A model generated the notes under the pieces. That model saw nothing but the letters and a program-made list of their open reading frames with translations, was not told where the DNA came from and searched no databases. Made by a program: the position numbers and the translations under genes. From IMG/VR virus record IMGVR_UViG_3300038441_001119, positions 124,001 through 188,000 of that record: a DNA stretch of 64,000 nucleotides, one strand, 5' to 3'. This document shows, one piece after another, positions 1 through 32,621 of the stretch. The first letter of the stretch is position 1; each line of letters begins with the position of its first letter.

Positions 1-148
1 TGGAGCTTGGTGCGAGTTTGTAAATCTCTTCCAAGGTTTCACATGCGTCCTCAGGTTCGAATTTATAGGTCCTTGAACCTGAAAGACTGTAGAGAGTTCC
101 GATGCCTGCGTGATACAAAACTGGAATTAAAAGTGCTGACATACTCAT
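1..148 (-). CDS. Hypothetical protein, truncated by window edge (MSMSALLIPVLYHAGIG...)
   Basis: ATG at 148 overlaps the TGA of 145..564 (ATGA); frame is open to position 1 (hand-translated). Confidence 0.5.
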   Translation of the reverse strand, partial: MSMSALLIPVLYHAGIGTLYSLSGSRTYKFEPEDACETLEEIYKLAPSS

Positions 149-564
149 ACGAAAATATATTCTTCGGTTATTGGTTCGGTTGTTGGTTCTATTGTGGTGA
201 AGTCGTTGCAGTGTCCTACGTCTTTCATCATAATGGCGAAAGCAAGGGCACCCCATGTAATACTCTGCGATCCTGCGGAATTGAGATACATCTTCTTCAT
301 GGAAGCAGGCATATGGTCCTCTTCGAACTCCTTTGCAACCGCCAGTATATTTCCGGCATGCCCCCAAATATCGTAAGACAGATCCAGAATTTTATTCACG
401 CACGCATTAATGTTCATGAGGACATCCTCTAGTGGAACAGTGTGCTTGTCAGGTTGAATGACTACTCCGTCTGGTTCTCTGGCTATGTGCGCAAATCCGG
501 GGATGTACACATCAGTCCAGTGCCTCTTGGGTCTACCTTCTTTGGGCTTATGGTACGGTATCAT
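145..564 (-). CDS. Hypothetical protein with C-terminal tag (EPITEEYIFV); paralogue of 561..968
   Basis: Starts MIPYH; aligns by eye with 561..968 (IP..., DL.Y.+G..G.I); ATGA-coupled. Confidence 0.85.
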   Translation of the reverse strand: MIPYHKPKEGRPKRHWTDVYIPGFAHIAREPDGVVIQPDKHTVPLEDVLMNINACVNKILDLSYDIWGHAGNILAVAKEFEEDHMPASMKKMYLNSAGSQSITWGALAFAIMMKDVGHCNDFTTIEPTTEPITEEYIFV

Positions 565-968
565 ACGAATACGTATTCCTCGGTTACTGGTTCCAGAACA
601 GAGGCAGTTATCACTGAATCACCTAAGTAACCATTATAATGCCCCGTAGCTTTTTCCATTATTTCCAAGGGTAAGATTGACCAAATGGAACCTCTACTTG
701 CCTCTATGTACTCAGGTGTAAGTACGCCTGAAGAATTAAAAGCACTGGAGGCATCTACGATTTGGCCTACAGTACCGTAGACTGCGTAGAACAGGTCATG
801 CATCTGCCCTGACTGGTGGCCGAGCGCCTCTACCACCTGTTTGATGGTTCCCGGTTCGGCTGGCTCTATCCTAATACCTTCCTTTTCGTAAATTACCTTA
901 CCGTAGTAAGGAATAGAGAAAGATGGGTAAGTGCGGTAGCTAGCAGATCTGCTGTGGTACGGTATCAT
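561..968 (-). CDS. Hypothetical protein with C-terminal tag (EPVTEEYVFV)
   Basis: Starts MIPYH; paralogue of 145..564; ATGA overlaps at both ends. Confidence 0.85.
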   Translation of the reverse strand: MIPYHSRSASYRTYPSFSIPYYGKVIYEKEGIRIEPAEPGTIKQVVEALGHQSGQMHDLFYAVYGTVGQIVDASSAFNSSGVLTPEYIEASRGSIWSILPLEIMEKATGHYNGYLGDSVITASVLEPVTEEYVFV

Positions 969-1531
969 ACGAATACATATTCCTCGGTTATGGGTTCGGT
1001 GGGCGCGTCAAAGAATTCATCCGCAAAGAAAACACCGCAGATGCGCTTGCGAGTGTAAGCCACCATAGAGCTATCGAAGTGAGTAAATGTTCCCGCCTTT
1101 CTACGTAGATTAATCTCAACCTGATAAGCATGATAGTATGCGGTCATGATGTTGTCATGATGCACACTGGCGGTATCAAATACCTTCCTGAACATCTTCT
1201 CCATAGCCCTTGTTTTCTTGGACATAGCGGAGATGCTGAGTGTAGACATTTCCTCTAACTTCAGGAACTCCGCCAGATAGGCTCTGTCTGGGTTCTTGGG
1301 AAGGGCCAGAAGTTCTGGAGGTGTGTAGACAGAGTCGTATTCCTCTTCCTCTTCATCCTCATCATACACGTCAAGCTCGTCATCATAATCGTCGTCTTCG
1401 TATTCCTCGGTATTGTCTTCGTCCATTGGTTCTTGGGTTGCTATTGTTGTGGTTGTCTCGCGATATGCCCAAGTGCCTTCCAACATTATCGTATCTTCTC
1501 TTCTGGTTAGGATTTCTAGCTCCATGGGCAT
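965..1531 (-). CDS. Acidic hypothetical protein with C-terminal tag (EPITEEYVFV)
   Basis: Long D/E tract; ends in the shared motif. Confidence 0.85.
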   Translation of the reverse strand: MPMELEILTRREDTIMLEGTWAYRETTTTIATQEPMDEDNTEEYEDDDYDDELDVYDEDEEEEEYDSVYTPPELLALPKNPDRAYLAEFLKLEEMSTLSISAMSKKTRAMEKMFRKVFDTASVHHDNIMTAYYHAYQVEINLRRKAGTFTHFDSSMVAYTRKRICGVFFADEFFDAPTEPITEEYVFV

Positions 1532-1546
1532 ATTTGTTGTGGTTGT

Positions 1547-2458
1547 TTAGATGAAGGTCATTTCCTCATCGATAGGTTCGAGACACTTCGGATCTACCGA
1601 GGTGTCTACTGCTGCCTTTGCCTTTTTACCGAATACTTGGCCGTACAGATTCCTGTTACCTTCGCCGATGAGTGCGTCTCGTAGCACTGAATTCATCATC
1701 TCGTCTAAATTTCGCATGTAAGCCTCGCGGTCGCGATTGGCTTGTGCGAGTTCTTCATCGGTTGGTGCACGAACTTCACGAACCTGCACTCCAACCGGTC
1801 TACCGAAGCGATCCAGTTGGTACGTAGGAGCATAAGTGTGGTCGGTAGGTAATACTGTGTTAGCATTAACCGTAGCGCCCTCATTGTTCAAAGCTTCCGC
1901 AGCAGCTACGCCCGCATCGTACGCTTCTCGTGCTATACGATCTGCAGGAACAGCTACGAACGTAGGGGGTTCTGCAAACGTTGCTGGAGGGTAAGCATAG
2001 TGGTTAGTAGGTCGAATCCAGCCTCGTCCTTGCGTGGGAGGTGCAGGGACTGCAGGGGCACCCTCAGGTTCGTCCATAGCGCGTGCTGTCTGCTCTAATA
2101 ACTCCTGCACCTCGTTCGTAACCCGCATAGCTTCCACATGTTGTCGCGCAATGCCTGCCCAGTTGACCGTTGTATGTCCCACGGTTTCCGTCGTGACGGT
2201 TCCTCCGTTATTCACCGATACATTGTTACCATGGGCATCGTTGATATGGACGGCACCGCCCGCTGGGTATGTTACCCGCAGTGTATCGGTGTTACTCATC
2301 CACTCGACGGGCATCTGTGTTGTTGTCATGTAACGCTGATACAAGGCATCGTCCGTAGGGCTTGCATATACTTGGTACCCGGTTGCTGTGTTGTAATCAG
2401 CTGCAGTATGGGTATGGGCACGGAGTGCGCGACCTACCATTTGAATATCTTCATTCAT
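1547..2458 (-). CDS. Low-complexity (A/T/P-rich) hypothetical protein with C-terminal tag (EPIDEEMTFI)
   Basis: Track ORF 1547..2533; ATG 2458 (MNEDIQ) preferred because it overlaps the upstream stop. Confidence 0.8.
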   Translation of the reverse strand: MNEDIQMVGRALRAHTHTAADYNTATGYQVYASPTDDALYQRYMTTTQMPVEWMSNTDTLRVTYPAGGAVHINDAHGNNVSVNNGGTVTTETVGHTTVNWAGIARQHVEAMRVTNEVQELLEQTARAMDEPEGAPAVPAPPTQGRGWIRPTNHYAYPPATFAEPPTFVAVPADRIAREAYDAGVAAAEALNNEGATVNANTVLPTDHTYAPTYQLDRFGRPVGVQVREVRAPTDEELAQANRDREAYMRNLDEMMNSVLRDALIGEGNRNLYGQVFGKKAKAAVDTSVDPKCLEPIDEEMTFI

Positions 2459-2969
2459 ATAACGTGTATACGTATTTTCTAAGTGCTTCCTGCGTATCAG
2501 TTTCTCCAGTGATGTCTTGCAGGAATTTGACATTCACGTTTTTCCGGTCCTCCATGCTGACCACGCGGGCATCAGGGAAGAACAGATTGGTTAAGTTGCA
2601 TATGCGTATGTTTGTAGGCACGTAGAAGCTCTTGGTTCCGCTGACTATGTTGGCATGTTCCATAATCAAGCGTAAGACCTTCTCAGGATGTGCTGTACAA
2701 ACTACCGCACTTTTGGATTCATCTGCTATCTGCTGTAACCATCCGGTTAGCTGACCTGCAATTAGAATCGAAAAGTCGAAGTAGTTGGTTTTCTTTACCA
2801 CTTCGACCGTCTTGGGAACATAGGGTATCAAGGTCTTCACTCCTTCATACGACATGTCCATCACTTTGGCTAATGTAAGTCCATTACCCTCCCTGTACGC
2901 TTCGTACGCACAGAGAGGATAGAATGGTTCACCGCCAAGTGTGATTTCAGCGGTGTATATGGGGATCAT
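2451..2969 (-). CDS. Hypothetical protein
   Basis: 172-aa ORF, TAATG-coupled to the upstream gene. Confidence 0.75.
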   Translation of the reverse strand: MIPIYTAEITLGGEPFYPLCAYEAYREGNGLTLAKVMDMSYEGVKTLIPYVPKTVEVVKKTNYFDFSILIAGQLTGWLQQIADESKSAVVCTAHPEKVLRLIMEHANIVSGTKSFYVPTNIRICNLTNLFFPDARVVSMEDRKNVNVKFLQDITGETDTQEALRKYVYTLYE

Positions 2970-3208
2970 TATACTTCCTCGTCGGCAAGCAAGCCGCGAT
3001 TGATCATCTCCTTTTGTAGGGCGAACATCCGGTGAAGCCTACGGGATTCAATCCTATAGGCGCTCTTCAGGTGATCATCCTCCATCTTGGAGACTTGTAT
3101 GGTTCTTTCATCCTTGGTGCTCCATAGAACATCATCGGGATCACATCGCTTACAAGCTAGTCTTGCCAAACACATGGCAAATCTGAATACAAAATTTTGA
3201 CTTTTCAT
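2969..3208 (-). CDS. Small phage protein (W-x-TKD...M-x-DDHL type)
   Basis: Motif WSTKDERTIQVSKMEDDHL; start 3208 lies just downstream of the hairpin. Confidence 0.65.
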   Translation of the reverse strand: MKSQNFVFRFAMCLARLACKRCDPDDVLWSTKDERTIQVSKMEDDHLKSAYRIESRRLHRMFALQKEMINRGLLADEEV

Positions 3209-3221
3209 TTTTAACAGCAGA

Positions 3222-3246
3222 AAGGCCCCGGGGTTACCGGAGCCTT
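3222..3246 (-). terminator. Probable intrinsic terminator hairpin
   Basis: AAGGCTCCGG-TAACC-CCGGGGCCTT followed by TCTGCTGTT; weak U-tract. Confidence 0.55.
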
Positions 3247-3284
3247 CCATCAGATCGTTAGATCCGTATATTTATCTTCCTTGT

Positions 3285-3755
3285 TTATAGCATCGCCAAC
3301 CCGATACGACTCTTCTCATGAACGGAGTACCCTCTCGCAAGATTGGGATACTTCTTTCTGAGAACCTTGATCGTATCTCGGGTAACTAGAACGAGAGTGT
3401 AGGGGTTACGAATCTCGTAATGTACGTCTTTGTTATCATACGCATAACGCATGACCGGGTGCATAATAATGACGTCACCTTCTTTGAGACCTCTATTGGA
3501 TACATTACCTATTACTGCCCGACCATGCTCCTCACCGAAGTGCATGTACAGGTCCAGACCTCGTGACATTTCGAGATCGAATTCAGCAAGCGGTACTTTG
3601 GATGGAATATGGAAGTAGTCTTTGTCAGCACGACGTTCCGCAGGCGTCGACTTAGAAGTTACTTCGGTCAGTTTCTTGTTATCCCAAGCTATGTCTGGCG
3701 ATAAAGTCAGAAAATTAGCATAGCCTGTGAATGTCTCTTTAATCAGCTTTCGCAT
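3285..3755 (-). CDS. Hypothetical protein
   Basis: 156-aa ORF in the operon. Confidence 0.75.
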   Translation of the reverse strand: MRKLIKETFTGYANFLTLSPDIAWDNKKLTEVTSKSTPAERRADKDYFHIPSKVPLAEFDLEMSRGLDLYMHFGEEHGRAVIGNVSNRGLKEGDVIIMHPVMRYAYDNKDVHYEIRNPYTLVLVTRDTIKVLRKKYPNLARGYSVHEKSRIGLAML

Positions 3756-4198
3756 ATAACATCGGCGGATGACGCCGTTCTATTCAAAAATGCATGTAGT
3801 GGATAAATATAGTATACCCCGTTTGTCGAGGGGTACGCTATCGAAGAGCAACCTTGTTTCAGGTCGATGTTCTCTCCGTCATGTTCCTGTGGAACCAATA
3901 TGAAGCCCGAGTGTCGAGGATGCATAAGAGGATCGAAGGCGATCAATGTTCGGTCTTCGTAAATCTCATGCCACTCATCGATTACCTTGGAAGGTTTCGG
4001 ACTCATCAACTCCTGAAACAGAGGAATCTTCTCCTCTACAAGAACCTTAACACTCAAGGCGGTGCTGAGAGGGTTGTCTTCCCTGTCATCAATTTCCTTG
4101 AATGCGTCATACAGATTATCCGAATAGATTTTGCCAACATACGGTTTGAGTCTTTGGATGATCTCCTTAGCCTCCCAAATCCGAATCTGCTTCGCCAT
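3743..4198 (-). CDS. Hypothetical protein
   Basis: 151-aa ORF overlapping the end of recA. Confidence 0.7.
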   Translation of the reverse strand: MAKQIRIWEAKEIIQRLKPYVGKIYSDNLYDAFKEIDDREDNPLSTALSVKVLVEEKIPLFQELMSPKPSKVIDEWHEIYEDRTLIAFDPLMHPRHSGFILVPQEHDGENIDLKQGCSSIAYPSTNGVYYIYPLHAFLNRTASSADVICES

Positions 4199-5609: not shown

Positions 5610-5623
5610 ATTATACAGTTGTA

Positions 5624-5654
5624 GAGGAGGGGCAGTATAACACCGCCCCTCCTC
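5624..5654 (-). promoter_or_regulatory. Intergenic GC-rich hairpin (processing, attenuation or weak terminator)
   Basis: GAGGAGGGGC...GCCCCTCCTC 10-bp stem with no U-tract. Confidence 0.5.
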
Positions 5655-5661
5655 CGGTCAA

Positions 5662-6960: not shown

Positions 6961-6974
6961 ATTTGCTTTATTAC

Positions 6975-9900
6975 TTACGTGGAGACAGTTGTCTCTTTTC
7001 TTGTTTTCTTGTTGATCACGGCTTCCGCCATGTTCTTCTTGTAATAACCGATCATCGCTTCCAGTTCGTCTTCAAGATGTTCAAGCTCCTTGGGAGTTGT
7101 TATCTCCTTCAAAGCCTCATCATCAAGCTTCCCTGACGACCATGAGCGGTTAATTTCAGTTTCAATAGGGTAATTGAGGTATCTACCGTCGTAGTCCCAA
7201 ACCACCTTCCTGAACATGAAAAGTTCATGTGCCTTCTGCCAAATGTTGACCTCCGCAATAGGACAGAGGGTCACAACAGCATCATACAGTAGCACCATTG
7301 GTCGGCCTATCAAGCCTCTTGTGATGCCAAAATGCAAAAGATTCTGAGCAGCGATTGCAGACGTGGAGGCGACACTTTCCTGTAGAGGGGTGTTACGACA
7401 TTCACGTCCCTGTGCGCTCATCAGGGCATCCCATACACGAGGGTCCATCGTTTTTCTGGAATGGGTCCCCAACCAGTGTCGAATACGACCTGAGGCAAGC
7501 CTGAGGTGGTCTTCTGACTTAGGCAGCTCCTGTTGCTCTTCCAGATACGCCGTTGCGACGGGCTGGCGTTCCTGTAGAGCATCAAGGATACCCTGCCCGT
7601 CTCCGGGGTTGGGTTTGGCCCCTGTATCCGCTTCAATTTTGCGTTCAAGACTATTACCCGAGGCCCCGTATGCAGATGAGAAATTCCCCACCTTACCTGA
7701 GCCGTCACGGTCTTTCTTCTTATCCAACGCTTCCCGTGGTAACTTCTTGAACATCTCAGCGAGCGACCAGTGCAGGTCCTCCTTTCCGGGATGAACGATG
7801 TTACCGTTTTCATCACGAAGCAGATCGTCTTCAGTGATTTTCACCCATACAGTCGGTTCCTTTTCCTTACCTTTCTCTTTGGCTTCAGGGTAGGCTAGGA
7901 TGTACTTATCAAATTGGTTTTCTTCGGGAATACCGCAATCCTTCTTATAGTTCAGACGGACCGGGTTCTTTTTCTTTTTGTCCGACTTAAGGAAGCCGAA
8001 CTGTTTATCCGGGAGAGTGACCAGATCAATCAAGTTCTGATCTCCTGAGATGAATGCAAGTCCACGAATCTCAGCGGTCTCATAGTCTGATTCCACCATG
8101 AGCATACCCTCTGGAGCAGTGACTACCGAACGGATGGACGGCAGTGCTTTCTCCAGATAGATGTGCCAACGCTCAGGAAGTTCACCTTCCTTGTGCAGAG
8201 ATTTGAACAGGGCTGCTACCCCTTCCTCGATACGCTTGTTCACGTACGACGGCCAGTTGAGGATGTTTGGTTTCCAACAACGGTTACGGGCGGTTTCGGT
8301 TACAGAGGAGTTATAGTGCACCCTACCGTCTTTTGCGATCCAGTAGTGCAAACCATTCTCTTTAACCAACTCACCATCGTCATCATACTCTGCGGGTTTG
8401 AGGAACGCCTTTGCGGCGTTACCGACAGCATTGAAGTCCAACAGGAGGTTCAGAACCGGGTCCTTGTAGGTCACGGAGAACATCTGCAGGGACTGTTTGT
8501 CCACGGAAGGTGCGTAGTTTTGTCTTACATCTTTGGGCAGGTTCTTGACCTTGCTCCAATCCATTGACGGGAACCCTTGTTCCTTTTTATTAGTACTTTT
8601 TACTGGTTCGTACTGCTTAATATCGAACAGCCACCGTCGCATCTGTTCCGGGGCGCGAATATTAAATTCAGGTGCGTTCAGGTAATGACCGTGAATGGCG
8701 ATAGCATCGGATACATGATCCGTACCGAATGCTGCTTTGAGTTTGTCCAAACTAGGACCCTCAGGGTCGCTCATGTAATCACACGCGAGCGCCAACCCTT
8801 CTTCTTCATCTCCGACTACCCGCTGGCAAACTTGTACAACCAAATGAGTGGCTTCTCTGGTCATGGTGACTTGGAATCTCTTCTCAAGTTCAACCTTGGC
8901 GAATTGGTACAAGTCACGCAGCTCATTGAGCTTCTCCATGTCCACAGGCAAACCTTCATAAGAGAAGTTGGTGAACACGTCGGTCGTGAAGGGATTAAAG
9001 ATAGTTTCGTAGTACTGCGTCAGCTGTTGTCGCTCCATCTCTTGTACGAGGTATGGATAAGCTCGCATTACCACGTCAACGTCCGCCATTGCATACGGTA
9101 GCAACAGATCGTCAGGGATGTCGGCATATCCATCGGAGTGACCCAGAGGATGTGTCTTCAACCATATGACGAGAGGCAGGTCATACCGACCCAAGTCCGT
9201 ATACTTCAGAGCAAGATTGTCCAAACCGAGATCTGCGTGTTCGTTACAGCATTGCTGCGCGAACTCAGTGTCCAGAAGACACTTCTTATAGATCTCAAGG
9301 TTCAGCCACTTCTTCATCCATACGGCGTCCGCAGAATAATGGTGACCCAGATACTTTACCTCTTTTCTGTTCAACCAAGCACCCAGCACCTGACCCACCT
9401 TTTCATAGGAAGCATCAAATACATAGTTACGTTGGTCGTCCATGAATCGAATGGCACATGCATGCCCTTCTTTCCAACAGAACTGGATGGTACGTAGGTT
9501 ACCGTCGATAAAGTTGTTCCCACCCCACTCGCAGTCCACCGAGATGAGGGTGTGATTTTCTTGTGCCCACATAGTCACCAGATCCACAACTTGTTCAAGG
9601 TTGTTGATCACGTGATACGAGGTCTTCATGCGTTTGGTTTCGAAGCCACGTATGGAGTCATACATGTTTCGAATTTCAAATAGATTGATCCTGAATTTCT
9701 CCACGTAGTCTGGACGTGAAGCAAGCAGGTGAACTGGGTCAAGGAGGATGAAGCGACAGTCATACTCCTTGTTATAGAACCACCCCGCTTTGATGTCATC
9801 AGCTCGGTATTTGACCGGGCTGAAGAAATCAAATACCGCCTTACCGAGACATACGACTATCTTCGGTTTTACTTCCCTCACTTCACTGTCGAAGGAGGGG

Positions 9901-10322
9901 GAGGCAAAGCGTAGCGAGGTGGCGTCTGGCTTCAAACGTTTAGCCTTTGGTAGAAGCCACTTACACATCGCAGTGAAGTAGCAGTCATCTAGGCTTATTC
10001 CCGATTGCTGGATGAGGTCCTTGAGGACGCTACCAGCGAGACACTTCATGTATTCCGGAGTTTCCTTGATCGGCTTCTCATATCGTTCACCCTGCCGGTA
10101 TTCAACCGCGTCCTCAGACAGTAGGGAGGGCATCACGAACATGATATCTGCAGGGCTTTTACCGTTCCCTGCTACATACAAAACTTCGTCTTTCCTGCGG
10201 GTCGTAGTAATCTTGGCAGGTGGTTCTTCCTCGAAGTTAGGTTGTGTCGGATTGTCAGGGACGTCTGTGCGTGGTCCCTGCTTCTTTTTTTGCTTTCTCT
10301 CAAAGTACTCGTTGAAATCCAT
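6975..10322 (-). CDS. polA: Family A DNA polymerase with N-terminal UDG-like domain and 3'-5' exonuclease
   Basis: Exo I SVDCE; Exo III YAMAD; motif A SDYETAEIR; motif B R...KVGNFSSAYG; motif C LLYDAV; N-terminal YFTAMCK/PKIVVCLGK family-4 UDG pattern. Confidence 0.92.
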   Translation of the reverse strand: MDFNEYFERKQKKKQGPRTDVPDNPTQPNFEEEPPAKITTTRRKDEVLYVAGNGKSPADIMFVMPSLLSEDAVEYRQGERYEKPIKETPEYMKCLAGSVLKDLIQQSGISLDDCYFTAMCKWLLPKAKRLKPDATSLRFASPSFDSEVREVKPKIVVCLGKAVFDFFSPVKYRADDIKAGWFYNKEYDCRFILLDPVHLLASRPDYVEKFRINLFEIRNMYDSIRGFETKRMKTSYHVINNLEQVVDLVTMWAQENHTLISVDCEWGGNNFIDGNLRTIQFCWKEGHACAIRFMDDQRNYVFDASYEKVGQVLGAWLNRKEVKYLGHHYSADAVWMKKWLNLEIYKKCLLDTEFAQQCCNEHADLGLDNLALKYTDLGRYDLPLVIWLKTHPLGHSDGYADIPDDLLLPYAMADVDVVMRAYPYLVQEMERQQLTQYYETIFNPFTTDVFTNFSYEGLPVDMEKLNELRDLYQFAKVELEKRFQVTMTREATHLVVQVCQRVVGDEEEGLALACDYMSDPEGPSLDKLKAAFGTDHVSDAIAIHGHYLNAPEFNIRAPEQMRRWLFDIKQYEPVKSTNKKEQGFPSMDWSKVKNLPKDVRQNYAPSVDKQSLQMFSVTYKDPVLNLLLDFNAVGNAAKAFLKPAEYDDDGELVKENGLHYWIAKDGRVHYNSSVTETARNRCWKPNILNWPSYVNKRIEEGVAALFKSLHKEGELPERWHIYLEKALPSIRSVVTAPEGMLMVESDYETAEIRGLAFISGDQNLIDLVTLPDKQFGFLKSDKKKKNPVRLNYKKDCGIPEENQFDKYILAYPEAKEKGKEKEPTVWVKITEDDLLRDENGNIVHPGKEDLHWSLAEMFKKLPREALDKKKDRDGSGKVGNFSSAYGASGNSLERKIEADTGAKPNPGDGQGILDALQERQPVATAYLEEQQELPKSEDHLRLASGRIRHWLGTHSRKTMDPRVWDALMSAQGRECRNTPLQESVASTSAIAAQNLLHFGITRGLIGRPMVLLYDAVVTLCPIAEVNIWQKAHELFMFRKVVWDYDGRYLNYPIETEINRSWSSGKLDDEALKEITTPKELEHLEDELEAMIGYYKKNMAEAVINKKTRKETTVST

Positions 10323-17540: not shown

Positions 17541-19640
17541 TTAGATGAAGACCATTTCTTCTTCAAATTCAGAAAACATTCCCGGAGCAGTTACGCTGAC
17601 AGGAATTGCGTCTTCAAGTTGTCTGTCGAAGAATTCCCAAGATGATCGCGGACTGGGACCACAGCCAAACCGATGCATCAGGGACGTGGTCTTTTCTGGA
17701 ATAGTCGCATCACTGAAATTAGTGAGAACCATTTCCTGTGAGATGTAGTTACCATCGAACAGACGACCAGTACCGTTTACAAGGGGTACATTGAGAAGAG
17801 TCTCTGTATCTTCGCAGTTGGCAATCTGATCTCTGGCAAAGGCCAACAGTTTCCTGTAGTCGTACTCTCCAGAGGTAACAAATTGTTCAACAAAGCCAAT
17901 AACAGGGTACAGCTCTTTTGCTATGTCTTCCAGTTGTTTCCACTGTGCGACAGTGGCTGCATGTTGGTTCGGAGCGACAAGATGGGCGTGGTGGCTGGCG
18001 GCGCTCAGGGAAAGAGTCATGTTGATGCTGGCCAACCACGGCAGCCCTGTTCTAGACAGACCTCCGGGGACAGCTTTGACCATGGCGGGCATGACGAAAT
18101 CCTCATCTTCCAGTCTTCCCCACTCGTTCTCAGTAGTAGGAATCCAACTTGGTCCCATGTGGTTGTTGCAGACGTCCGCAGGAGACATCCACAGAGTGGT
18201 CAGATAAGTGCAATACAGCGTATCAACTTGAACGTGGTTACCGCGCATGAGCATGTCTGCAGACTGTCCCGCAGCATACATCTGGGGATGCTGCATAGAA
18301 ATACCATAGCTGTAAGGGTCGTTTCTGGCGTAGACGCCCCAGCCTTCCGCAGTATTAGCTTCAGCCCTAAAAGACGTCGTCCAGCGCGTGGTTCCCCGAG
18401 GATTATCACCCGGACCAAGCTGTGGTAGCCACCAAGTGTTCCGCTTATCTTCCTCCGCAACGGCGGTATAACCTCCTTTACGGATGTCGACGGTCATCTT
18501 GGTGTCAGTGCAACTTCCATTTTCCACCTCACGAATAGTGCGGTTACGATGAAAGACCTTCATCTTGTGATTGGTCTGAAACGCCCGGAACATGTGTTCC
18601 GTTCTCCGAAGACGCAGCAGGTTCACACGAATGTTACCCTCTCCTTCGACGTCGGTGGTAAGGCCGCTCACGTAGAGATTACAGAAGCCAACATCTACGG
18701 GCATCTCACGGAAAGGCGCTTTGACTTTGTACGCCAAGGTGAGTTTGCGGTTCTTGAGTCTAGCCATACCTTTGGCGTAATTCTCCACCTCAACCGTACC
18801 TGTATTTTTGTACAGAGAGAAAGTAGACTCCATGAACCGGTCACCGTTGGATGCCATCTCCATCGTGTGATGTGCTTGCTGCACTCGGTCACTGATGTAA
18901 TGAACAATGGTACTCTCGATCCGAATGTTACCGTTATCCATCATCTTGATAAACAAGCTGACAGGACGCTGGTCACCTGAAGGATCATGGACCATACATT
19001 GATGCCCCTTTACCCGAACCAGTTCCCCGTCCTTGGTTCCCCACAGTTGCTTGCCTTCCGCATTGGTGTGCGTAAAGACTTCGATGGACGAGGTTACCCG
19101 TGTGTCCGTACTGGGGATATACCTTGCGAAGTGATGCGCATTGCTCTCACTGTAAGTACGTGAGACAACACCTCCTCTAGAAAGAGGAGCAACTGCCAAA
19201 GAAGTCCCTCCTCCATTGATGGCGGCGAAAAGCGGAGTGTCAATGGACATAGATGAATCTATACCGTTGGTCCTCATAATCGTGAACGAATCGCTTCCCG
19301 AAACCAGCTGCAGTCGCTCCGAAGAGGTGTTGAGGTTGATGTTCATGGCTGCTGCTAGAAAATCCTCCATCGTAGACAGAGTCATTCCAGTTGCCTCACC
19401 TATCGTGACATCTACTGGAGAGCCAATCGTCTTGGAAAGAACATCGCGGTCAAAGCCAGTAGCAAAACGCATGAAAAAATGAACAGGGGAGAGGGTTGCA
19501 CCTTCTCCGTCTGGTCGATGGTAGTCCTCACGTTGCTGAGGACCGTACCGAACGGCGCCGATGACGCTGTTCGGGTGCGTTGGGCTGATGTAACGTTGAT
19601 ACGTGTCCCCTCCGCGTACGAAATAGTTGATTACTCTCAT
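17541..19640 (-). CDS. 699-aa hypothetical protein with C-terminal tag (SEFEEEMVFI)
   Basis: Long ORF, ATGA-coupled to the RAMP gene; no recognisable catalytic motif. Confidence 0.8.
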   Translation of the reverse strand: MRVINYFVRGGDTYQRYISPTHPNSVIGAVRYGPQQREDYHRPDGEGATLSPVHFFMRFATGFDRDVLSKTIGSPVDVTIGEATGMTLSTMEDFLAAAMNINLNTSSERLQLVSGSDSFTIMRTNGIDSSMSIDTPLFAAINGGGTSLAVAPLSRGGVVSRTYSESNAHHFARYIPSTDTRVTSSIEVFTHTNAEGKQLWGTKDGELVRVKGHQCMVHDPSGDQRPVSLFIKMMDNGNIRIESTIVHYISDRVQQAHHTMEMASNGDRFMESTFSLYKNTGTVEVENYAKGMARLKNRKLTLAYKVKAPFREMPVDVGFCNLYVSGLTTDVEGEGNIRVNLLRLRRTEHMFRAFQTNHKMKVFHRNRTIREVENGSCTDTKMTVDIRKGGYTAVAEEDKRNTWWLPQLGPGDNPRGTTRWTTSFRAEANTAEGWGVYARNDPYSYGISMQHPQMYAAGQSADMLMRGNHVQVDTLYCTYLTTLWMSPADVCNNHMGPSWIPTTENEWGRLEDEDFVMPAMVKAVPGGLSRTGLPWLASINMTLSLSAASHHAHLVAPNQHAATVAQWKQLEDIAKELYPVIGFVEQFVTSGEYDYRKLLAFARDQIANCEDTETLLNVPLVNGTGRLFDGNYISQEMVLTNFSDATIPEKTTSLMHRFGCGPSPRSSWEFFDRQLEDAIPVSVTAPGMFSEFEEEMVFI

Positions 19641-26902: not shown

Positions 26903-26917
26903 TATGGGTGTATAAAT

Positions 26918-26948
26918 AAAAACCCCGGCTCTTTGCAGAGACGGGGTT
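26918..26948 (-). terminator. Rho-independent terminator
   Basis: AACCCCGTCTCT-GCAA-AGAGCCGGGGTT followed by TTTATTT. Confidence 0.75.
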
Positions 26949-26968
26949 GGGTGTCGAGAAATCTGACT

Positions 26969-27457: not shown

Positions 27458-27620
27458 CTTCAGTTCGATCCTGCTCTATTTCCTCCTTGACTGCAAGATC
27501 TTTATCGGCTTTTATTTTATCTGTACACGCTTTAATAGCAGCCTCGTACGCAGAATTGCGTGGGCGACGGGTGTTCCAGTTGTTCCGATTGAGGAACAAA
27601 GCAGCAGTACGAGCAATCAT
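27402..27620 (-). CDS. Small hypothetical protein, back-to-back with terminase
   Basis: 72-aa charged ORF; ATG abuts the terminase ATG (CAT|ATG). Confidence 0.45.
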   Translation of the reverse strand: MIARTAALFLNRNNWNTRRPRNSAYEAAIKACTDKIKADKDLAVKEEIEQDRTEDERIERQERKDRYKPNTD

Positions 27621-29501
27621 ATGTATAAGTCTAACAAAGACCTTTATTCGCGAATTAGTAACGATACTAACTTCCGACTCAATATTAACAAACTATTTGG
27701 GAGATTTCAAATAGAAGCAGCGGAAGCAGCAAAAGGTCGTCCCGGCGCTGAGGAGAAGCGGGACAAGACGATGATGGAACTATTCCAGTATTGTGGTTGG
27801 AACGTTGGCATTTTCTTTCCCCTGTTCTTCCCCAAGATGATTGAAGGGGGTCCTCTGAATGTGATGCGTCGTCCGTTCGGATTCATGATGACCGAGCTGA
27901 ACGTCTCTGGTTACACCTGTATCAGGGGTAGTCGTCAGATCGCAAAGTCCACCAATCTTGTTGGCAGGCAGCTTGTTAAGGGATTCCTGTTTCCTCGGTT
28001 CAAGTCGATGTACATCTGTCCTCACAACAACCACAAGAAAACCTATCAGAACAGGTTTGCTGAAATGGAGGCGGCATGTCCGTTCATGGACTTCGTGTAC
28101 AAGAACCCTCGTCTCCGCACCAACCTTTCGTACAAGCAGTATCCTCTGGAAGGTGAAGTAAACATTGTGAACTGTCTGACCGACTCTTCGCAGGCGCGTT
28201 CGAAAACCACTGATGAGCTTCTGTACGACGAGTACCAGCTCTTTGACTGGACTCTTGAAGGTGATATTCGTCCCTGCCAATCGGTCTCTAAGATTCCGAT
28301 GACTGTGTATGCAGGAACCTCCACCACTGTCGACTCCCCTCTGGAGTTCCGGTACCAAGAGGGAAGCCAACATACGTGGAAGGTCAGAAGTCCGAACGGT
28401 AAGGATTGGATTGATTTCGGTGACGAGGAGTTGATGATCAAATGCATACGTCCTCGCGGTTTGGTGTGTCCTTACACTGAACGTCCCCTGAATGTCGCAC
28501 AAGGCGAGTACACTCCTACTTACAAGGATAGACATGAATATGGTTACACCAGTATCCATGTTCCTCAGCTTATTATCAAAGACAAGGTGGAGCACCGTAT
28601 CGACTGGGCTAAGATCTACGAAGCTTTTGAGGAGTTCGATAGACCGAAGTTCATGGAAGAGTTCCTTGGTATCCCCTCGGAACTGGGTGCTCGGGAAATT
28701 ACTGAGGCAGACCTTAAGGCGATCTGCACTCTTGGGAGCAAAGACGAGGTCTTTGAAAGGGTCAAACGCGGTGACTACAGTATTATTGTCTCTGGCTTTG
28801 ACTGGGGTGGTTCTGACCACATTCCACACATCAAAGCTTCCCGCGTTAGTTTCACTGCCAATGCTGTTCTTGGTCTATCTGCTGATGGATACGTTGATAT
28901 CCTTCATATGAGGCAGCACCATGGTATGAACTATGACTTCATTACCGGGCAGATTGCTGAGGACTACAGGAAGTACCAGTGTAACGCACTAGCTTGTGAC
29001 GCTGCTGGTGGTCAAGTCTACCTCAACAATCTTGATAAGCTTCTGAATCATAAGACTAACTTCCGGTTCGGTTACCACGCGCATGTCTTCCAACTGATGG
29101 GAGTTCCTTCGCATGGAGCGCCGAACCATTACACGTTGAACAAGCACGAGTCTATCGCCCAGCTGTTCCAAGCCATCAAGCACAAGAAGATTCGCTGCTA
29201 CAAGTGGGAGGAGTCCGGGCCGCGTCTTAGCGAGATCCTGAATGTACAACGTGTTCTTATCGAACCGCAGTCGGGACCTCCGAAGTATCACTATCACATG
29301 ACACCTCGGAATCCCGACGATACGGTTCATGCTTTGAACTACTCATATATTCTGATGCGCTTGCTTGCTGGTGAAAACGTTGTTCACGACGAACGCTTGA
29401 TGCGTACTATTCAACAGGCTGTGCGGGGCGAGAATACTTTCTCCCCATTCCAGACATTCGGTGGTGTACCGAATCTGTTCGGGGAAATCGTTTCCGGTTA
29501 A
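27621..29501 (+). CDS. terL: Terminase large subunit
   Basis: GSRQIAKST Walker A variant; LLYDEYQ Walker B; GTS coupling motif; GFDWGG and PDDTVHALNY nuclease motifs; start MYKSNK inferred. Confidence 0.88.
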   Translation: MYKSNKDLYSRISNDTNFRLNINKLFGRFQIEAAEAAKGRPGAEEKRDKTMMELFQYCGWNVGIFFPLFFPKMIEGGPLNVMRRPFGFMMTELNVSGYTCIRGSRQIAKSTNLVGRQLVKGFLFPRFKSMYICPHNNHKKTYQNRFAEMEAACPFMDFVYKNPRLRTNLSYKQYPLEGEVNIVNCLTDSSQARSKTTDELLYDEYQLFDWTLEGDIRPCQSVSKIPMTVYAGTSTTVDSPLEFRYQEGSQHTWKVRSPNGKDWIDFGDEELMIKCIRPRGLVCPYTERPLNVAQGEYTPTYKDRHEYGYTSIHVPQLIIKDKVEHRIDWAKIYEAFEEFDRPKFMEEFLGIPSELGAREITEADLKAICTLGSKDEVFERVKRGDYSIIVSGFDWGGSDHIPHIKASRVSFTANAVLGLSADGYVDILHMRQHHGMNYDFITGQIAEDYRKYQCNALACDAAGGQVYLNNLDKLLNHKTNFRFGYHAHVFQLMGVPSHGAPNHYTLNKHESIAQLFQAIKHKKIRCYKWEESGPRLSEILNVQRVLIEPQSGPPKYHYHMTPRNPDDTVHALNYSYILMRLLAGENVVHDERLMRTIQQAVRGENTFSPFQTFGGVPNLFGEIVSG

Positions 29502-30298
29502 ACCCAGACAAATTCCTCGGTCACCTCATCGCGGGTCTCAGCGAACTTGTGTTCGAGGTACTTGGGTGCGAGTTCGTTCCACTTAGCTTCGGCTAACAGT
29601 TTCACCTCCGTACTGTCGGGGTTATGTAGGGCGTACTTTGCCATATTGACCGCGTGTACGGTTACACCTTGCATCACACGGGGGAATATGTGCAAGTTTT
29701 TGGTGAATACGTCTACGTGCCTCGTGGTCTCGCTTCCATAGTTGAATAAGTTCAACGTACCGATCACCACCTTCTCCGGTGACACTTCATACATCGAATG
29801 GACATCGAGCTGAGAGTGCCCAAATAGAGCCGACCTTGTTTGTAGCGATTTACCAATCAATACTTCTCCACTAACGAACTGCACTTCTGCTCCAGAAGAA
29901 ACGTGACCCCTCACGTTGACGCTTTCTCTGAACTCTATCTTGGTACCAGAAGGACGAGCGTGGATACTATCGAGGGATTCCACGCTTGATCGGAACACAA
30001 GATCCCCGTCCGATTCGATACGACCATGCGCGTGAACACTTTCTAGGAAAATTGTCGTTCCAGTTCTCCGACGAGTAAAGTCCATGTTCTTGAACATTAC
30101 TACCGTACCAACTCCCACAGTCAATCCTTCATAAGTATGGCCTGCTGGTAGATGTACGATACCAAGTCCGGATTCTAGGACAAGTCTCGACTCTCTTGAA
30201 AGAGTGAGCAGCGTTGACTGTAGAGCTGGAAGAAGGATCTTCTCTTTGGAGAACCTATGCGCAGTCGTCAGGTCTTCTTTAGATATATGAAAGTCCAT
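29498..30298 (-). CDS. Beta-helix paralogue 4 with C-terminal tag (DEVTEEFVWV)
   Basis: GLG...LTVGVGT shared N-terminal motif; V/I/G-rich short strands. Confidence 0.75.
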   Translation of the reverse strand: MDFHISKEDLTTAHRFSKEKILLPALQSTLLTLSRESRLVLESGLGIVHLPAGHTYEGLTVGVGTVVMFKNMDFTRRRTGTTIFLESVHAHGRIESDGDLVFRSSVESLDSIHARPSGTKIEFRESVNVRGHVSSGAEVQFVSGEVLIGKSLQTRSALFGHSQLDVHSMYEVSPEKVVIGTLNLFNYGSETTRHVDVFTKNLHIFPRVMQGVTVHAVNMAKYALHNPDSTEVKLLAEAKWNELAPKYLEHKFAETRDEVTEEFVWV

Positions 30299-31098
30299 TA
30301 TATGAATACGTACTCTTCTTCGAGGACAGAGGTTGGCAGCTGAGGTCCATTGATGATGACTTTGGACTCCAGCTGTTTGGCGTAGGTCGGATGTCCCTTG
30401 AACAGGAACTCGTCACACCTGACAGGGTACTGCACATCGTTGGAATCGACGTTGTGGTGCCACAGTCCTTCCACGGTAACTGTGGGTAACGTTTTTTGTG
30501 CTGGGATGTCGGCGGGCCAGAGCTGGATCATACCTGTAGTCTCCAGTTTGGGGCATTTGACATTGCACTGTGCCATATGTATCTTGACAACCTTCACGGG
30601 ACTATCGAAGACGATATTGGCGAACTTCTCAGAATCGTTCTCAGCCATCGTGACAGGAACGACAATGATATAGTCGGCCTCGGCAGGACCCTTGATGTGA
30701 ATGAACATGTCACTCAATGCTACACCAGATGGACGTAACGACAGATTCAGTACAAGATCAGCTCCGGATGACCCTTTGTAGCTACCAGCAACAACAAGTT
30801 TATGCTTAACGATAATCTGCCGATTGTGCTCAAGGTTACCTCCTAAGTTTCCTGTAGTTAAAGTAAATTGGCAGGAATTAATCCTGATATTCGTTCCGCT
30901 ACCTACTTCGAGATGCCCTACGACACAGGTGGAACTAATATCGTATGCACCGAGGTCAGGAGCGATGGCAACATTGGGTAGACGGGATGGTTGTCCTTGC
31001 CTGCCTTGCTCTCGTCCCCATGCTGTAATAGCTGCGCTAAGGTTCGTAGTACGGGAGGTGATATTGATGTCGATTGTTGGTATTTCAGGTGGTTTCAT
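30298..31098 (-). CDS. Beta-helix paralogue 3 with C-terminal tag (SVLEEEYVFI)
   Basis: PDLG...LEVGSGT motif. Confidence 0.75.
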   Translation of the reverse strand: MKPPEIPTIDINITSRTTNLSAAITAWGREQGRQGQPSRLPNVAIAPDLGAYDISSTCVVGHLEVGSGTNIRINSCQFTLTTGNLGGNLEHNRQIIVKHKLVVAGSYKGSSGADLVLNLSLRPSGVALSDMFIHIKGPAEADYIIVVPVTMAENDSEKFANIVFDSPVKVVKIHMAQCNVKCPKLETTGMIQLWPADIPAQKTLPTVTVEGLWHHNVDSNDVQYPVRCDEFLFKGHPTYAKQLESKVIINGPQLPTSVLEEEYVFI

Positions 31099-31101
31099 AA
31101 T

Positions 31102-31860
31102 TTAGATCCACACGAATTCTTCTGTGATGGGTTCTGTAATGATGGCGACCTTTTTGAAGGCTATATTGGTGAACTTAAGTGACCCATGGTTAACCTTAGG
31201 TCCAAGTTCCTCCGTGCGCACCGCTACTGACAGGGTGGAATTGGTTGGCGGTACGTTGAACTCCGTACAATCTACAACAATATGCTCGGTTGAGCGTCTA
31301 CTGTTGGTAGCCGCAATACTCAACGCTGTAAGGGTACCATCTACACTCAGATGAGAGTACATACCGCGAGCCACTACCATGTGGCTGAGGGTGACATCTC
31401 CTTCTACAGTCAGGCTACCTGTTATTAGCAGCTTGTTGGTACCTGATACTTCTTTGCTGATAGGACCGCATATGGTACCTGACGACTTGGTCATACAATA
31501 CAAAGTACCGAAAGCGTGGTTGGCGAACGAGGCATTACCTGCTGGTCGACTTATCCCATTTTCAAACAGGAACTTTCCGTACAAGTCCATGGAGTACTGG
31601 TACCCCATTTTCCCCTGTACATGCACAGTACCATGTATGGAAATTCCAGATTCGAAATACAGTTCCGTACCTGCGCCGATCCGAAGGTGACGTACCACTG
31701 CCCAGAAAGCGATATAGACCACACCTAGTCCTCCGGGAACATCCCAGTCAATCGTGCGTCCCCGGTTGTTCATCGTGGACATACTGACCACTCTGTGAGT
31801 CATGCGAGGACGAAGCTCACAGTGATCCCACCCGTTTTGTGTTATGGTTGGAAATTTCAT
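31102..31860 (-). CDS. Beta-helix paralogue 2 with C-terminal tag (EPITEEFVWI)
   Basis: GLG...LRIGAGT; ITGSLTVEGDV repeats; ATG 31860 overlaps the upstream TGA. Confidence 0.75.
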   Translation of the reverse strand: MKFPTITQNGWDHCELRPRMTHRVVSMSTMNNRGRTIDWDVPGGLGVVYIAFWAVVRHLRIGAGTELYFESGISIHGTVHVQGKMGYQYSMDLYGKFLFENGISRPAGNASFANHAFGTLYCMTKSSGTICGPISKEVSGTNKLLITGSLTVEGDVTLSHMVVARGMYSHLSVDGTLTALSIAATNSRRSTEHIVVDCTEFNVPPTNSTLSVAVRTEELGPKVNHGSLKFTNIAFKKVAIITEPITEEFVWI

Positions 31861-32621
31861 ACAAATACGTACTCCTCTTCTATTGGACTGGTGACTGGTG
31901 CATATCCTTGCTTTGGTACATGCATAGGTTTTTCGCGAACATGGACGCTCTTGAAGTGTTCCTTGGTAGTACCATCTCCGAGACGGTCGCATATTACGTG
32001 GGTAGGCAAGGGACCACCGGCTCTGTCAGAGGACCATCCTGCCTCAAACGTACCGGCGTCAATATATGGAGGTGTGTTTCCGACAGGGAAGTCATAATGT
32101 TGTACCCAGTCGGCTAAGCTAAATGTACCACTGACAGTTACCTCCGAGCTTCCAGCAGAACCATCAGTATATTTTCCAGTGCAGGTGAGGTCTCCTTTGA
32201 CGATAAGCTGGGTTTGCTGCCCGTCCATTCTGATGGAGGTTGTTTCGCAGTTTCCGTCTACTGTAACAACGTCTTTTACAATGATGCGAACACCATACGA
32301 CGATTTGACGATAAGATCGCCTTTGACATGGCACGTTTCGTAGAACCCTAGGTCACCCTTAAGGACAGTGAGGTCGCCTCCGAAAACCGAATCGCGGTAA
32401 CAGAACGTAATCCCGTCCTGCATGGTTAGGTTAGTTCCATCGCCTACAATCGCGGTTCCGATAACAAGCGATCCATCATGGTAAATATCTCCCAAGTCTG
32501 GATCAATATGCAAGTCCATGTCACCTTTGCTGATGACTCTGTTGCTGTGTACCGGGAATGGCCAGACGATCTGACCGTCATGTGAAATGTTGTCTTTTGT
32601 GATTACTATTTTTTCTCTCAT
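31857..32621 (-). CDS. Beta-helix (bactofilin-like repeat) paralogue 1 with C-terminal tag (SPIEEEYVFV)
   Basis: PDLG...IVGDGT; VKGDL, VDGNC, VKGDL, VSGTF repeats. Confidence 0.78.
   Translation of the reverse strand: MREKIVITKDNISHDGQIVWPFPVHSNRVISKGDMDLHIDPDLGDIYHDGSLVIGTAIVGDGTNLTMQDGITFCYRDSVFGGDLTVLKGDLGFYETCHVKGDLIVKSSYGVRIIVKDVVTVDGNCETTSIRMDGQQTQLIVKGDLTCTGKYTDGSAGSSEVTVSGTFSLADWVQHYDFPVGNTPPYIDAGTFEAGWSSDRAGGPLPTHVICDRLGDGTTKEHFKSVHVREKPMHVPKQGYAPVTSPIEEEYVFV

What the first reader, a model, noticed from the sequence alone, without database searches (positions are those of the whole stretch)
145..32621. Nine proteins from about five unrelated families share a stop-anchored C-terminal tag (consensus EPITEEYVFV): candidate new phage docking, sorting or adaptor system
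Seen: the C-termini are EPITEEYIFV (145), EPVTEEYVFV (561), EPITEEYVFV (965), EPIDEEMTFI (1547), SEFEEEMVFI (17541), DEVTEEFVWV (29498), SVLEEEYVFI (30298), EPITEEFVWI (31102) and SPIEEEYVFV (31857). The consensus phi-[TDE]-E-E-[YFM]-[VIT]-[FW]-[VI]-stop has the same register to the stop in all nine. Codons vary synonymously (GAA/GAG, TAT/TAC, GTA/GTC/GTG, CCA/CCC/CCT), substitutions are conservative, and both TAA and TGA are used, so selection appears to act on the peptide with a free C-terminus. The carriers are about five unrelated families (135-699 aa) at three loci. No replication, packaging or tail gene in the window carries it. Known analogies: short C-terminal docking tails such as SSB-Ct DDDIPF, the T4 gp33/gp55/gp43 clamp-binding tails, the SspB tail that binds ClpX, class II PDZ ligands (phi-x-phi-COOH), and the acidic E-block plus hydrophobic end of Dot/Icm substrates. 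Inference: variable cargo or target-binding domains are plugged into one common hub. Options are a capsid-loading or ejection signal, protease-adaptor tails that deliver host targets for degradation, or a degron.
Basis: partly seen in the sequence, partly recalled or inferred. Interest (0 to 1): 0.93.

Follow-up and report, generated by a model that had tools for sequence, protein, structure and literature searches.

The report
Shared C-terminal address tag in jumbo phage
A dozen otherwise unrelated, lineage-specific proteins of one uncultivated 212-kb phage all end in the same ten-residue tail, which looks like an address label read by one still unidentified receptor.

Summary
All nine ORFs end, in exact register to the stop, in phi-x-E-[ED]-[YFMW]-x-[FW]-[VI]. 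The motif never occurs internally. Conservation sits on codon positions 1-2 and ends at the stop codon. The window is part of a 212-kb jumbo phage with its own multisubunit RNA polymerase. Scanning 87% of that contig gives 12 carriers at four loci, in eight sequence groups with no detectable homology once the tag is removed. All carriers lack family hits, and the largest has no homologue in 1.8 billion proteins. They sit in variable slots of conserved replication operons and beside an anti-defence-like block. Relatives at 41-49% polymerase identity keep the synteny but have neither the carriers nor any shared C-terminal motif. The tag occurs in no other phage searched. Best reading: a stop-anchored docking peptide that takes variable accessory proteins to one receptor that reads the free carboxylate (about 0.75). 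The receptor is not identified. My preferred use is prohead loading, as with the T4 capsid targeting sequence (about 0.3). Next is recognition by an AAA+ machine, possibly the Bcs1/Cdc48-like ATPase just upstream of four carriers. It is novel as a variant of a known principle, and its generality is limited to one lineage.

The parts
145..564 (-). Carrier, 139 aa, ends EPITEEYIFV (tag codons 148-177, stop TGA 145-147). Paralogue of the 561 gene.
   Evidence: coding score +0.19; no Pfam/PHROG/PADLOC hit
561..968 (-). Carrier, 135 aa, ends EPVTEEYVFV (tag 564-593). Its stop overlaps the next start (ATGA).
965..1531 (-). Carrier, 188 aa, hyperacidic N-terminal half (pI 4.3), ends EPITEEYVFV (tag 968-997).
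1547..2533 (-). Carrier, up to 328 aa, ends EPIDEEMTFI (tag 1550-1579).
17541..19640 (-). Carrier, 643-699 aa, a strict ORFan, ends SEFEEEMVFI (tag 17544-17573). Inserted between the SbcCD/exonuclease genes and a helicase.
   Evidence: synteny
29498..30298 (-). Family E carrier, 266 aa, ends DEVTEEFVWV (tag 29501-29530). Last gene of its operon; it meets a convergent + strand gene.
30298..31098 (-). Family E carrier, 266 aa, ends SVLEEEYVFI (tag 30301-30330).
31102..31860 (-). Family E carrier, 252 aa with the corrected start, ends EPITEEFVWI (tag 31105-31134).
31857..32621 (-). Family E carrier, 254 aa, predicted mostly beta strands at low confidence, ends SPIEEEYVFV (tag 31860-31889).
32818..34203 (-). 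Classical-clade AAA ATPase (PF00004), 461 aa, directly upstream of the four family E carriers. It has a hydrophobic N-terminus and a lineage-specific 240-aa N-domain. It is a candidate receptor only, by adjacency.

Best explanation
The decapeptide [ESD]-[PEV]-phi-[TDE]-E-[ED]-[YFMW]-[VIT]-[FW]-[VI]-COOH is a short linear docking motif, an address tag. It is placed at the extreme C-terminus of at least 12 lineage-specific accessory proteins of one jumbo phage.

Proposed working:
- The variable body of each protein carries the activity.
- The four hydrophobic last residues plus the free carboxylate plug into a pocket or groove of a single receptor. The two acidic residues and the phi-x positions before them add specificity.

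Shown: peptide-level selection, exact anchoring to the stop, absence of internal copies, unrelated carriers, and restriction to accessory ORFans in variable genome slots.

Inferred: that one common receptor exists, and what it does.

Preferred specific reading (about 0.3): the tag loads these proteins into the prohead for co-injection, a C-terminal counterpart of the T4 capsid targeting sequence. The phi-x-E at positions -8 to -6 could be a prohead-protease site that removes the last five residues.

Second reading (about 0.2-0.25): the receptor is an AAA+ machine. See the rivals.
For: Statistics:
- Nine of nine tags confirmed.
- They are the only hits among 2837 six-frame segments.
- 0 internal copies, and 0.003 hits expected by chance.

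Peptide-level selection:
- Codon positions 1-2 are conserved, position 3 is not, and nothing is conserved after the stop.

Carriers:
- 12 carriers in 87% of the contig, in eight groups with hhalign probability <=1.6% between groups.
- They have no family hits.
- The 699-aa carrier has no homologue in 5.8 billion (word index) or 1.84 billion (full HMMER) proteins.

Genome position:
- Relatives keep the synteny SbcC-helicase-DnaB-primase-Pol-X-UvsX-DEAD helicase but carry other small genes in the slots where the carriers sit. The tag therefore marks accessory genes.

For prohead loading:
- Giant-phage prohead proteases cut after Glu in an A-X-E motif (PMC10052503).
- 11 of 12 tags have Glu at -6, and 11 of 12 have I/V/L/F at -8.
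- The phage has a prohead-protease-like gene and an MCP-like gene.
- Neighbours of the carriers look anti-defence-like: Apyc1-like, Macro and NADAR.
Against: - No receptor was found.
- No virion proteome exists, and the phage is uncultivated.
- The carriers are embedded without intergenic gaps in replication/recombination operons. This suggests early or middle expression rather than the late expression expected for head cargo, although no promoter classes could be defined.
- The T4 signal is N-terminal.
- The protease family, and so its Glu specificity, is not established (PHROG E 3.8e-5, no Pfam hit).
- Exact anchoring to the carboxylate is not a known requirement of capsid or encapsulin cargo signals.
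- No relative carries the tag, so long-term conservation is untested.
- The linker before the tag is only mildly enriched in P/T/S/A/G (0.39 against 0.32, p=0.02).
Confidence: 0.75

Rival explanations
1. The tag is read by an AAA+ machine. One option is the phage's own Bcs1/Cdc48-like ATPase (32818-34203), which would remodel, assemble or translocate the tagged proteins. The other is a host Clp/Lon/FtsH protease, in which case the tag is a degron that limits the lifetime of early accessory proteins.
For: - The AAA gene lies directly upstream of four of the 12 carriers, in the same orientation.
- Its 245-residue N-domain is as lineage-restricted as the tag, with only a self hit.
- AAA+ unfoldases are known to read hydrophobic C-termini with a free carboxylate. 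The ssrA/ClpX case is established knowledge, recalled here and not tested.
- The tag is about as long as the ssrA tag and, like it, has an acidic/aromatic part followed by a hydrophobic end.
- Co-transcription with early and middle genes fits timed turnover.
Against: - Eight carriers are far from any AAA gene.
- The region aligned to pore loop 1 of VAT is shortened and lacks the aromatic-hydrophobic-Gly motif, which is unlike a threading unfoldase.
- No protease partner was seen.
- Degrons are usually degenerate, yet ten positions are constrained here.
- There is no precedent for a phage placing one degron on a dozen of its own proteins.
Confidence: 0.22
2. The tag docks accessory proteins onto a replication, transcription or host hub. 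This would work like the SSB C-terminal tip, the acidic aromatic tails of T7 gp2.5 and gp4 on T7 DNA polymerase, or the clamp-binding tails of T4.
For: - The tag has acidic residues followed by an aromatic/hydrophobic C-terminal end.
- Six carriers are co-transcribed with the PolA, UvsX, helicase and SbcCD genes.
Against: - None of the replisome proteins themselves carries it.
- No sliding clamp was found in the proteins scanned (and the precomputed Pfam lists).
- The slots holding the carriers are variable in relatives that keep the same replisome.
- No bacterial protein family with this tail was found that the phage could be mimicking.
Confidence: 0.2
3. The tail is not an address. It is either the last conserved remnant of one ancient, rapidly diverging paralogue family, or a C-terminal beta-strand used for self-association or co-assembly of the carriers.
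For: - Carriers occur in tandem arrays of 5, 4 and 2.
- Two arrays contain recognisable paralogues.
- YVFV is a strongly beta-forming, sticky end.
Against: - Carrier sizes range from 128 to 699 aa.
- hhalign finds nothing between the eight groups.
- The tail is the only conserved part and is in exact register to the stop.
- Even under common descent, this pattern means the tail is the constrained functional element.
Confidence: 0.08
4. The conservation is at the nucleotide level. It would be a Shine-Dalgarno or translational-coupling element for the next gene, or a recombination site for cassette shuffling.
For: - E-E is often encoded as GAGGAA.
- Eight of 12 stops overlap, or lie within 4 nt of, the next start.
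Against: - Third codon positions are free.
- Five tags have no GAGG/GGAG/AGGA core.
- The spacing to the next ATG would be 12-13 nt.
- Two carriers (29498, and the second gene of the pair outside the window) have no coupled downstream gene.
- Nothing is conserved after the stop.
Confidence: 0.02

Closest known systems
T4 capsid targeting sequence (CTS) of the internal proteins IPI-III, Alt and others
   Same: A short terminal peptide of about ten residues is the only thing shared by otherwise diverse accessory or anti-defence proteins of one phage. The peptide carries a phi-x-Glu element of the kind cut by prohead proteases.
   Different: The T4 signal is N-terminal and this one is C-terminal and anchored to the stop. 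Packaging and cleavage are unproven here. There is no sequence similarity.
Encapsulin cargo-loading (targeting) peptides
   Same: These are C-terminal short peptides that load unrelated cargo enzymes into an HK97-fold shell (PMC8346489).
   Different: The consensus is different. Encapsulin cargo genes sit next to the shell gene, whereas the MCP here is tens of kb away. Exact carboxylate anchoring is not a known feature of those peptides.
SSB C-terminal tip and T7 gp2.5/gp4 acidic aromatic tails
   Same: They have acidic residues followed by a hydrophobic or aromatic extreme C-terminus used as a docking knob.
   Different: In those systems one or two core replication proteins carry the tail and bind many or one partner. 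Here many ORFan accessory proteins carry one tail.
ssrA tag / ClpX-SspB recognition
   Same: It is a C-terminal peptide of similar length with an acidic-aromatic part and a hydrophobic end that needs the free carboxylate.
   Different: The tag here is genome-encoded, not added by tmRNA. It ends in bulky [FW][VI], not LAA. No degradation has been shown.
Class II PDZ ligands (phi-x-phi-COOH)
   Same: The last residue is V or I, position -2 is mostly V or I, and the motif is strictly C-terminal.
   Different: No PDZ protein was found in the phage proteins scanned. Bacterial PDZ proteins are mostly periplasmic, and the carriers have no signal peptides.

Membership tests
T4-type capsid targeting sequence | A short shared terminal peptide on otherwise unrelated phage proteins | tested here: met
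   12 carriers in 8 groups
T4-type capsid targeting sequence | N-terminal position | tested here: not met
   All tags are at the extreme C-terminus
T4-type capsid targeting sequence | Contains a prohead-protease site (hydrophobic-x-Glu) and is removed in the head | tested here: inconclusive
   A phi-x-E pattern is present in 11 of 12 tags. A protease-like gene was found only weakly. Cleavage is not testable here.
T4-type capsid targeting sequence | Carriers are present in proheads or virions | not testable with these tools
   The phage is uncultivated and no proteome exists
Encapsulin cargo-loading peptide | C-terminal peptide on unrelated cargo | tested here: met
   the preceding linker is only mildly P/T/S/A/G-rich
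Encapsulin cargo-loading peptide | Cargo genes adjacent to the HK97-fold shell gene | tested here: not met
   The MCP-like gene is at contig ~193 kb, while carriers are at ~75, 124-126, 142 and 154-157 kb
Clamp-binding C-terminal tails (T4 gp45 partners) | The phage encodes a sliding clamp, and the polymerase carries the tail | tested here: not met
   No clamp family appeared in the Pfam/PHROG scans. The Pol ends in ...KETTVST.
SSB-Ct / T7 gp2.5-type tail | The carrier is an SSB or a core replisome protein | tested here: not met
   The carriers are ORFans with no family hit and sit in variable slots
ssrA-type degron | Added by tmRNA, and ends in small aliphatic residues (LAA-like) | tested here: not met
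   The tag is encoded in frame in each gene and ends in [FW][VI]. There is no tmRNA in the window.
PDZ class II ligand | phi-x-phi-COOH at the extreme C-terminus | tested here: met
   Position -1 is V or I in 12 of 12. Position -3 is V or I in 10 of 12.
PDZ class II ligand | A cognate PDZ-domain receptor in the same compartment | tested here: inconclusive
   No PDZ hit in the proteins scanned. The host is unknown, and 13% of the contig was not seen.
Dot/Icm-type C-terminal secretion signal | A type IVB secretion system and coupling complex in the producing cell | not tested
   The carriers are phage proteins and the host is unknown. This is a resemblance only (acidic block plus hydrophobic end).

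The most novel reading that the evidence does not exclude
The tag and the lineage-specific N-domain of the adjacent Bcs1/Cdc48-like, possibly membrane-anchored AAA ATPase form a phage-encoded cargo-address system. In it, a carboxylate-reading ATPase moves folded tagged proteins across the host membrane or into the capsid. The decapeptide would then be a portable signal for delivering arbitrary proteins.
Probability: 0.1. Interest if true: 0.9.

Novelty: new variant of a known kind. Interest (0 to 1): 0.66.

Why it matters
Short terminal address peptides shared by unrelated proteins are rare and useful. The T4 capsid targeting sequence and the encapsulin cargo peptides both became tools for packing foreign proteins.

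This is a C-terminal, carboxylate-anchored tag on a dozen ORFans of a jumbo phage from an uncharacterised clade. It would mark out a functional set of accessory proteins, probably host-takeover or anti-defence proteins, that nothing else could group. It also points to a receptor that can be fished out with a ten-residue peptide.

If it is a capsid-loading signal, it would be a C-terminal counterpart of the N-terminal T4 signal. It would also give a way to predict injected proteins from sequence.

The limit is that the tag is seen in one lineage only, so it may be a local invention rather than a general rule.

Tried and rejected
- **Homologues of carriers.** The word-index search and the full HMMER search of 1.84 billion representatives found only the query itself for the 699-aa carrier. 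PDB sequence searches were empty. Pfam, PHROGs and PADLOC were empty.
- **Homologues of the AAA N-domain.** Self only.
- **The tag as a search key.** In IMG/VR, only this contig has real hits and the others are chance short ORFs. In JGI/ENA metagenomes, only the identical phage in another sample appeared, plus a Cas2 family ending in PQKEEYVFV. In 185,579 species genomes there are five unrelated ORFs of 70 aa or more.
- **The Cas2 lead.** It belongs to Methanobrevibacter (27-29% GC against 49% for the phage). None of 773 spacers matches the phage. It was rejected as coincidence and is of the order expected by chance.
- **Relatives.** Five loci around polymerases of 45-49% identity, and three around protease homologues, have no tag and no other shared C-terminal motif.
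- **Within-lineage variation.** Other samples are 100% identical, so no dN/dS can be computed.
- **Structure.** AlphaFold2 on the four family E paralogues gave pLDDT 42, which is unusable, so no fold search was run.
- **Promoter classes to time expression.** No enriched intergenic motif.
- **ThiF-like E1 enzyme** (contig ~94 kb) as a C-terminal adenylating receptor. Considered and judged unlikely, because the C-terminal residue is a bulky V or I. Not tested.
- **HbYX proteasome-docking motif.** The penultimate residue is F or W, not Y, and the carriers are not ATPases.


Full report
**1. The observation**

TGA ends four of them and TAA ends five.

A six-frame scan of all 2837 stop-to-stop segments of the window with [DE][DE][YFMW].[FWY][VIL]$ returns these nine and nothing else. 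In a greedy set of 69 putative genes the motif occurs only at C-termini and never internally. Random six-residue draws matched to each protein's composition give 0.003 hits per window.

I aligned the 45 nt before and 40 nt after each stop for 12 tags. Information is concentrated in codon positions 1 and 2 of residues -6 to -1, is low at third positions, and is near zero after the stop. Five tags encode E-E without any GAGG/GGAG/AGGA core. Two carriers have no translationally coupled downstream gene.

The conservation is therefore on the peptide and is tied to the free C-terminus. A ribosome-binding or recombination-site explanation is rejected.

**2. Where the window comes from**

The window is part of IMGVR_UViG_3300038441_001119, a 212,352-bp contig. 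The same genome was assembled at 100% identity from other samples.

It is a jumbo phage with the following features:
- split multisubunit RNA polymerase pieces;
- a family A polymerase fused to an exonuclease and a family-4 UDG domain;
- UvsX-like, DnaB-like, primase, helicase and SbcCD genes;
- a head module with a protease-like and an MCP-like gene at about 192-197 kb.

No GenBank phage is close; the best polymerase identity is about 23%. More than 300 metagenomic polymerases at 41-49% identity exist, many on contigs of 200-215 kb.

**3. How many carriers there are**

I walked along the contig and scanned positions 28,293-212,352, which is 87% of it. This gives 12 carriers at four loci:
- two adjacent genes at about 75-77 kb, ending EPVTEEYIFI and the degenerate EEDVTDWEFV;
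- five in tandem at about 123.7-126.5 kb: the four at window 145-2533, plus one just left of the window ending SVIDEDWVFV;
- the 699-aa protein;
- the four family E genes.

Position by position, the tag reads as follows:

| Position | Residues (count of 12) |
|---|---|
| -10 | E/S/D |
| -9 | P/E/V |
| -8 | I/V/L/F (11) |
| -7 | T/E/D (11) |
| -6 | E (11) |
| -5 | E/D (12) |
| -4 | Y/F/W/M (12) |
| -3 | V/I (10) |
| -2 | F/W (12) |
| -1 | V/I (12) |

All carriers have positive coding scores. No head, tail, polymerase, helicase, recombinase or RNAP gene carries the tag.

**4. Whether the carriers are related**

With the tag removed, phmmer links only c145 to c561 and c30298 to c31857. An alignment shows the four genes at 29498-32621 share an N-terminal core, so they are paralogues. 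hhalign between the groups gives probabilities of 1.6% or less. That makes eight sequence groups, of 128-699 aa.

None hits Pfam, PHROGs or PADLOC. The two that were searched (the 328-aa and 699-aa carriers) hit no PDB sequence. The 699-aa carrier has no homologue other than itself in the 5.8-billion word-indexed set or in a full HMMER pass over 1.84 billion representatives. A structure prediction for family E was too poor to use, at pLDDT 42.

**5. Genomic setting**

Around the polymerase, five relatives keep the order SbcC, exonuclease, helicase, DnaB, primase, Pol, a conserved protein of 430-520 aa, UvsX, a few small genes, DEAD helicase. In this phage the five-gene carrier array fills the slot of small genes before the DEAD helicase. 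The 699-aa carrier is inserted before the first helicase.

The relatives have unrelated small genes there. They have no tag and no other shared C-terminal motif.

The carriers are therefore lineage-specific accessory genes in variable slots. They are packed without gaps into replication operons, which suggests early or middle expression. I could not define promoter classes to test this.

Family E follows a classical-clade AAA ATPase after a 197-nt gap. Upstream of that ATPase lie an Apyc1-like metallo-beta-lactamase, a Macro-like protein and further enzymes. The family E operon ends where it meets a real plus-strand gene.

**6. The tag elsewhere**

Degenerate DNA patterns for the tag found only this contig in IMG/VR; all other hits are stop-to-stop segments of 12-21 residues. 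In the metagenome collection they found only the identical phage, apart from chance hits.

One recurrent hit is a 96-aa Cas2 ending in PQKEEYVFV. It belongs to Methanobrevibacter (27-29% GC) and none of its 773 spacers matches the phage. My own rough estimate is that a few real proteins ending in the motif are expected by chance in a collection of this size. I treat the Cas2 hit as coincidence.

No bacterial protein family with this tail emerged that the phage might be mimicking.

**7. Mechanism**

What is shown fits a short linear docking motif: a variable body, a tail of about ten residues, and a strict need for the free C-terminus. The region before the tail is only mildly enriched in P/T/S/A/G (0.39 against 0.32, p=0.02).

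That the tail binds one common receptor is an inference, which I hold at about 0.75. The receptor is unknown. Pfam and PHROG scans of some 100 proteins, plus the precomputed Pfam lists for the rest of the walked contig, show no PDZ, TPR, clamp or similar domain.

*Prohead loading (about 0.3).* This is the specific reading I prefer. The exact precedent is T4. Its internal proteins are diverse defence-countering proteins that share only a capsid targeting sequence (PMC3012670). Giant-phage prohead proteases cut after Glu in A-X-E (PMC10052503). The tag has hydrophobic-x-Glu at -8 to -6. Against it: the T4 signal is N-terminal, the carriers sit in replication operons, the protease family is not established, and no virion data exist.

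*Recognition by an AAA+ machine (about 0.22).* The adjacent ATPase is closest to VAT/Cdc48/Afg2 and Bcs1. It has a hydrophobic N-terminus and an N-domain as lineage-restricted as the tag. However, its pore-loop-1 region is shortened, a paralogue elsewhere shares that trait, and eight carriers are not near it. A host Clp/Lon/FtsH degron is a variant of this idea.

*Replisome or host-hub docking (about 0.2).* This would resemble the SSB tip or the T7 gp2.5 tail. It fits the chemistry but not the fact that only accessory ORFans carry the tag.

*Remnant of a single family, or a self-association strand (about 0.08).*

*A nucleotide-level signal (about 0.02).*

**8. Comparison and novelty**

In principle the system works like known terminal address peptides: the T4 CTS, encapsulin cargo peptides, and SSB-type tails. 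It is a member of none of them. The position, the consensus, the gene arrangement or the carrier type fails in each membership test.

I file it as a new variant of a known kind. Its weak points are that it is confined to one uncultivated lineage, that conservation in evolution cannot be shown, and that the receptor is unidentified.

The next steps are ordinary: a peptide-versus-proteome co-folding screen, peptide pull-downs, prohead co-expression with a GFP-tag reporter, and stability assays in laboratory E. coli strains.

Noticed in passing
window 6975-10322 (-): The DNA polymerase is a family A enzyme fused to a 3'-5' exonuclease and a family-4 UDG domain. More than 300 relatives (41-49% identity), many on 200-215 kb contigs, form a clade of jumbo phages with conserved synteny. 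The clade is absent from the GenBank phage collection, where the best identity is about 23%.
   Followed up: partly
window 32818-39317 (-): A run of anti-defence-like or nucleotide-signal-degrading genes. It holds an AAA ATPase, an Apyc1-like metallo-beta-lactamase (34200-35108), a Macro-like protein (35105-35620), a protein with a class II aldolase/adducin domain (35785-37146) and a MYG1-family exonuclease (38343-39317).
   Followed up: partly
window 32818-34203 (-); L108 5872-7191; L173 21760-23166: The genome has three PF00004 AAA ATPase genes. The window copy and the one at contig ~39 kb share 31% identity in the AAA core. Both have a shortened segment where VAT/Cdc48 carry pore loop 1, which resembles Bcs1. 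The window copy has a hydrophobic N-terminus that may be a membrane anchor.
   Followed up: partly
window ~27621-29501 (+): A long plus-strand ORF (716 codons from TTG, probably about 626 aa from the first ATG) has a clear coding signature. The overlapping minus-strand ORFs (27780-28829, 28989-29330) do not. It converges on the last family E carrier, with the stop codons overlapping by 4 nt. It has no family hit.
   Followed up: partly
L022-L098 (many), L145: A 96-aa Cas2 of the Methanobrevibacter intestini group, common in human gut metagenomes, ends in ...LPQKEEYVFV, identical to the phage tag core. Its GC is 27-29%, and none of 773 spacers from the adjacent arrays matches the phage. Judged a coincidence.
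   Followed up: yes
window 965-1531 (-): This carrier has a hyperacidic N-terminal half (a run of D/E/Y, whole-protein pI 4.3). That is reminiscent of DNA-mimic anti-restriction proteins.
   Followed up: no
L108 591-1310 (contig ~94 kb); L016/L112 (contig ~57-74 kb); L109 1145-1669: A ThiF/E1-like adenylyltransferase (239 aa), three NADAR-domain genes, a CYTH-domain protein and a ThyX-like gene are encoded elsewhere on the contig. Two adjacent paralogues (295 and 321 aa) end in similar ...N/DELGL/I tails.
   Followed up: no
L111 505-1956 and 4228-5220 (contig ~192-197 kb): This is the head module. A 483-aa protein has residues ~60-225 that resemble prohead or capsid maturation proteases of Bacillus phage G, Rhodococcus phage E3 and cluster C mycobacteriophages. 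An MCP-like protein of 330 aa is also present (PHROG 2522, E 2e-6). Neither is tagged.
   Followed up: partly
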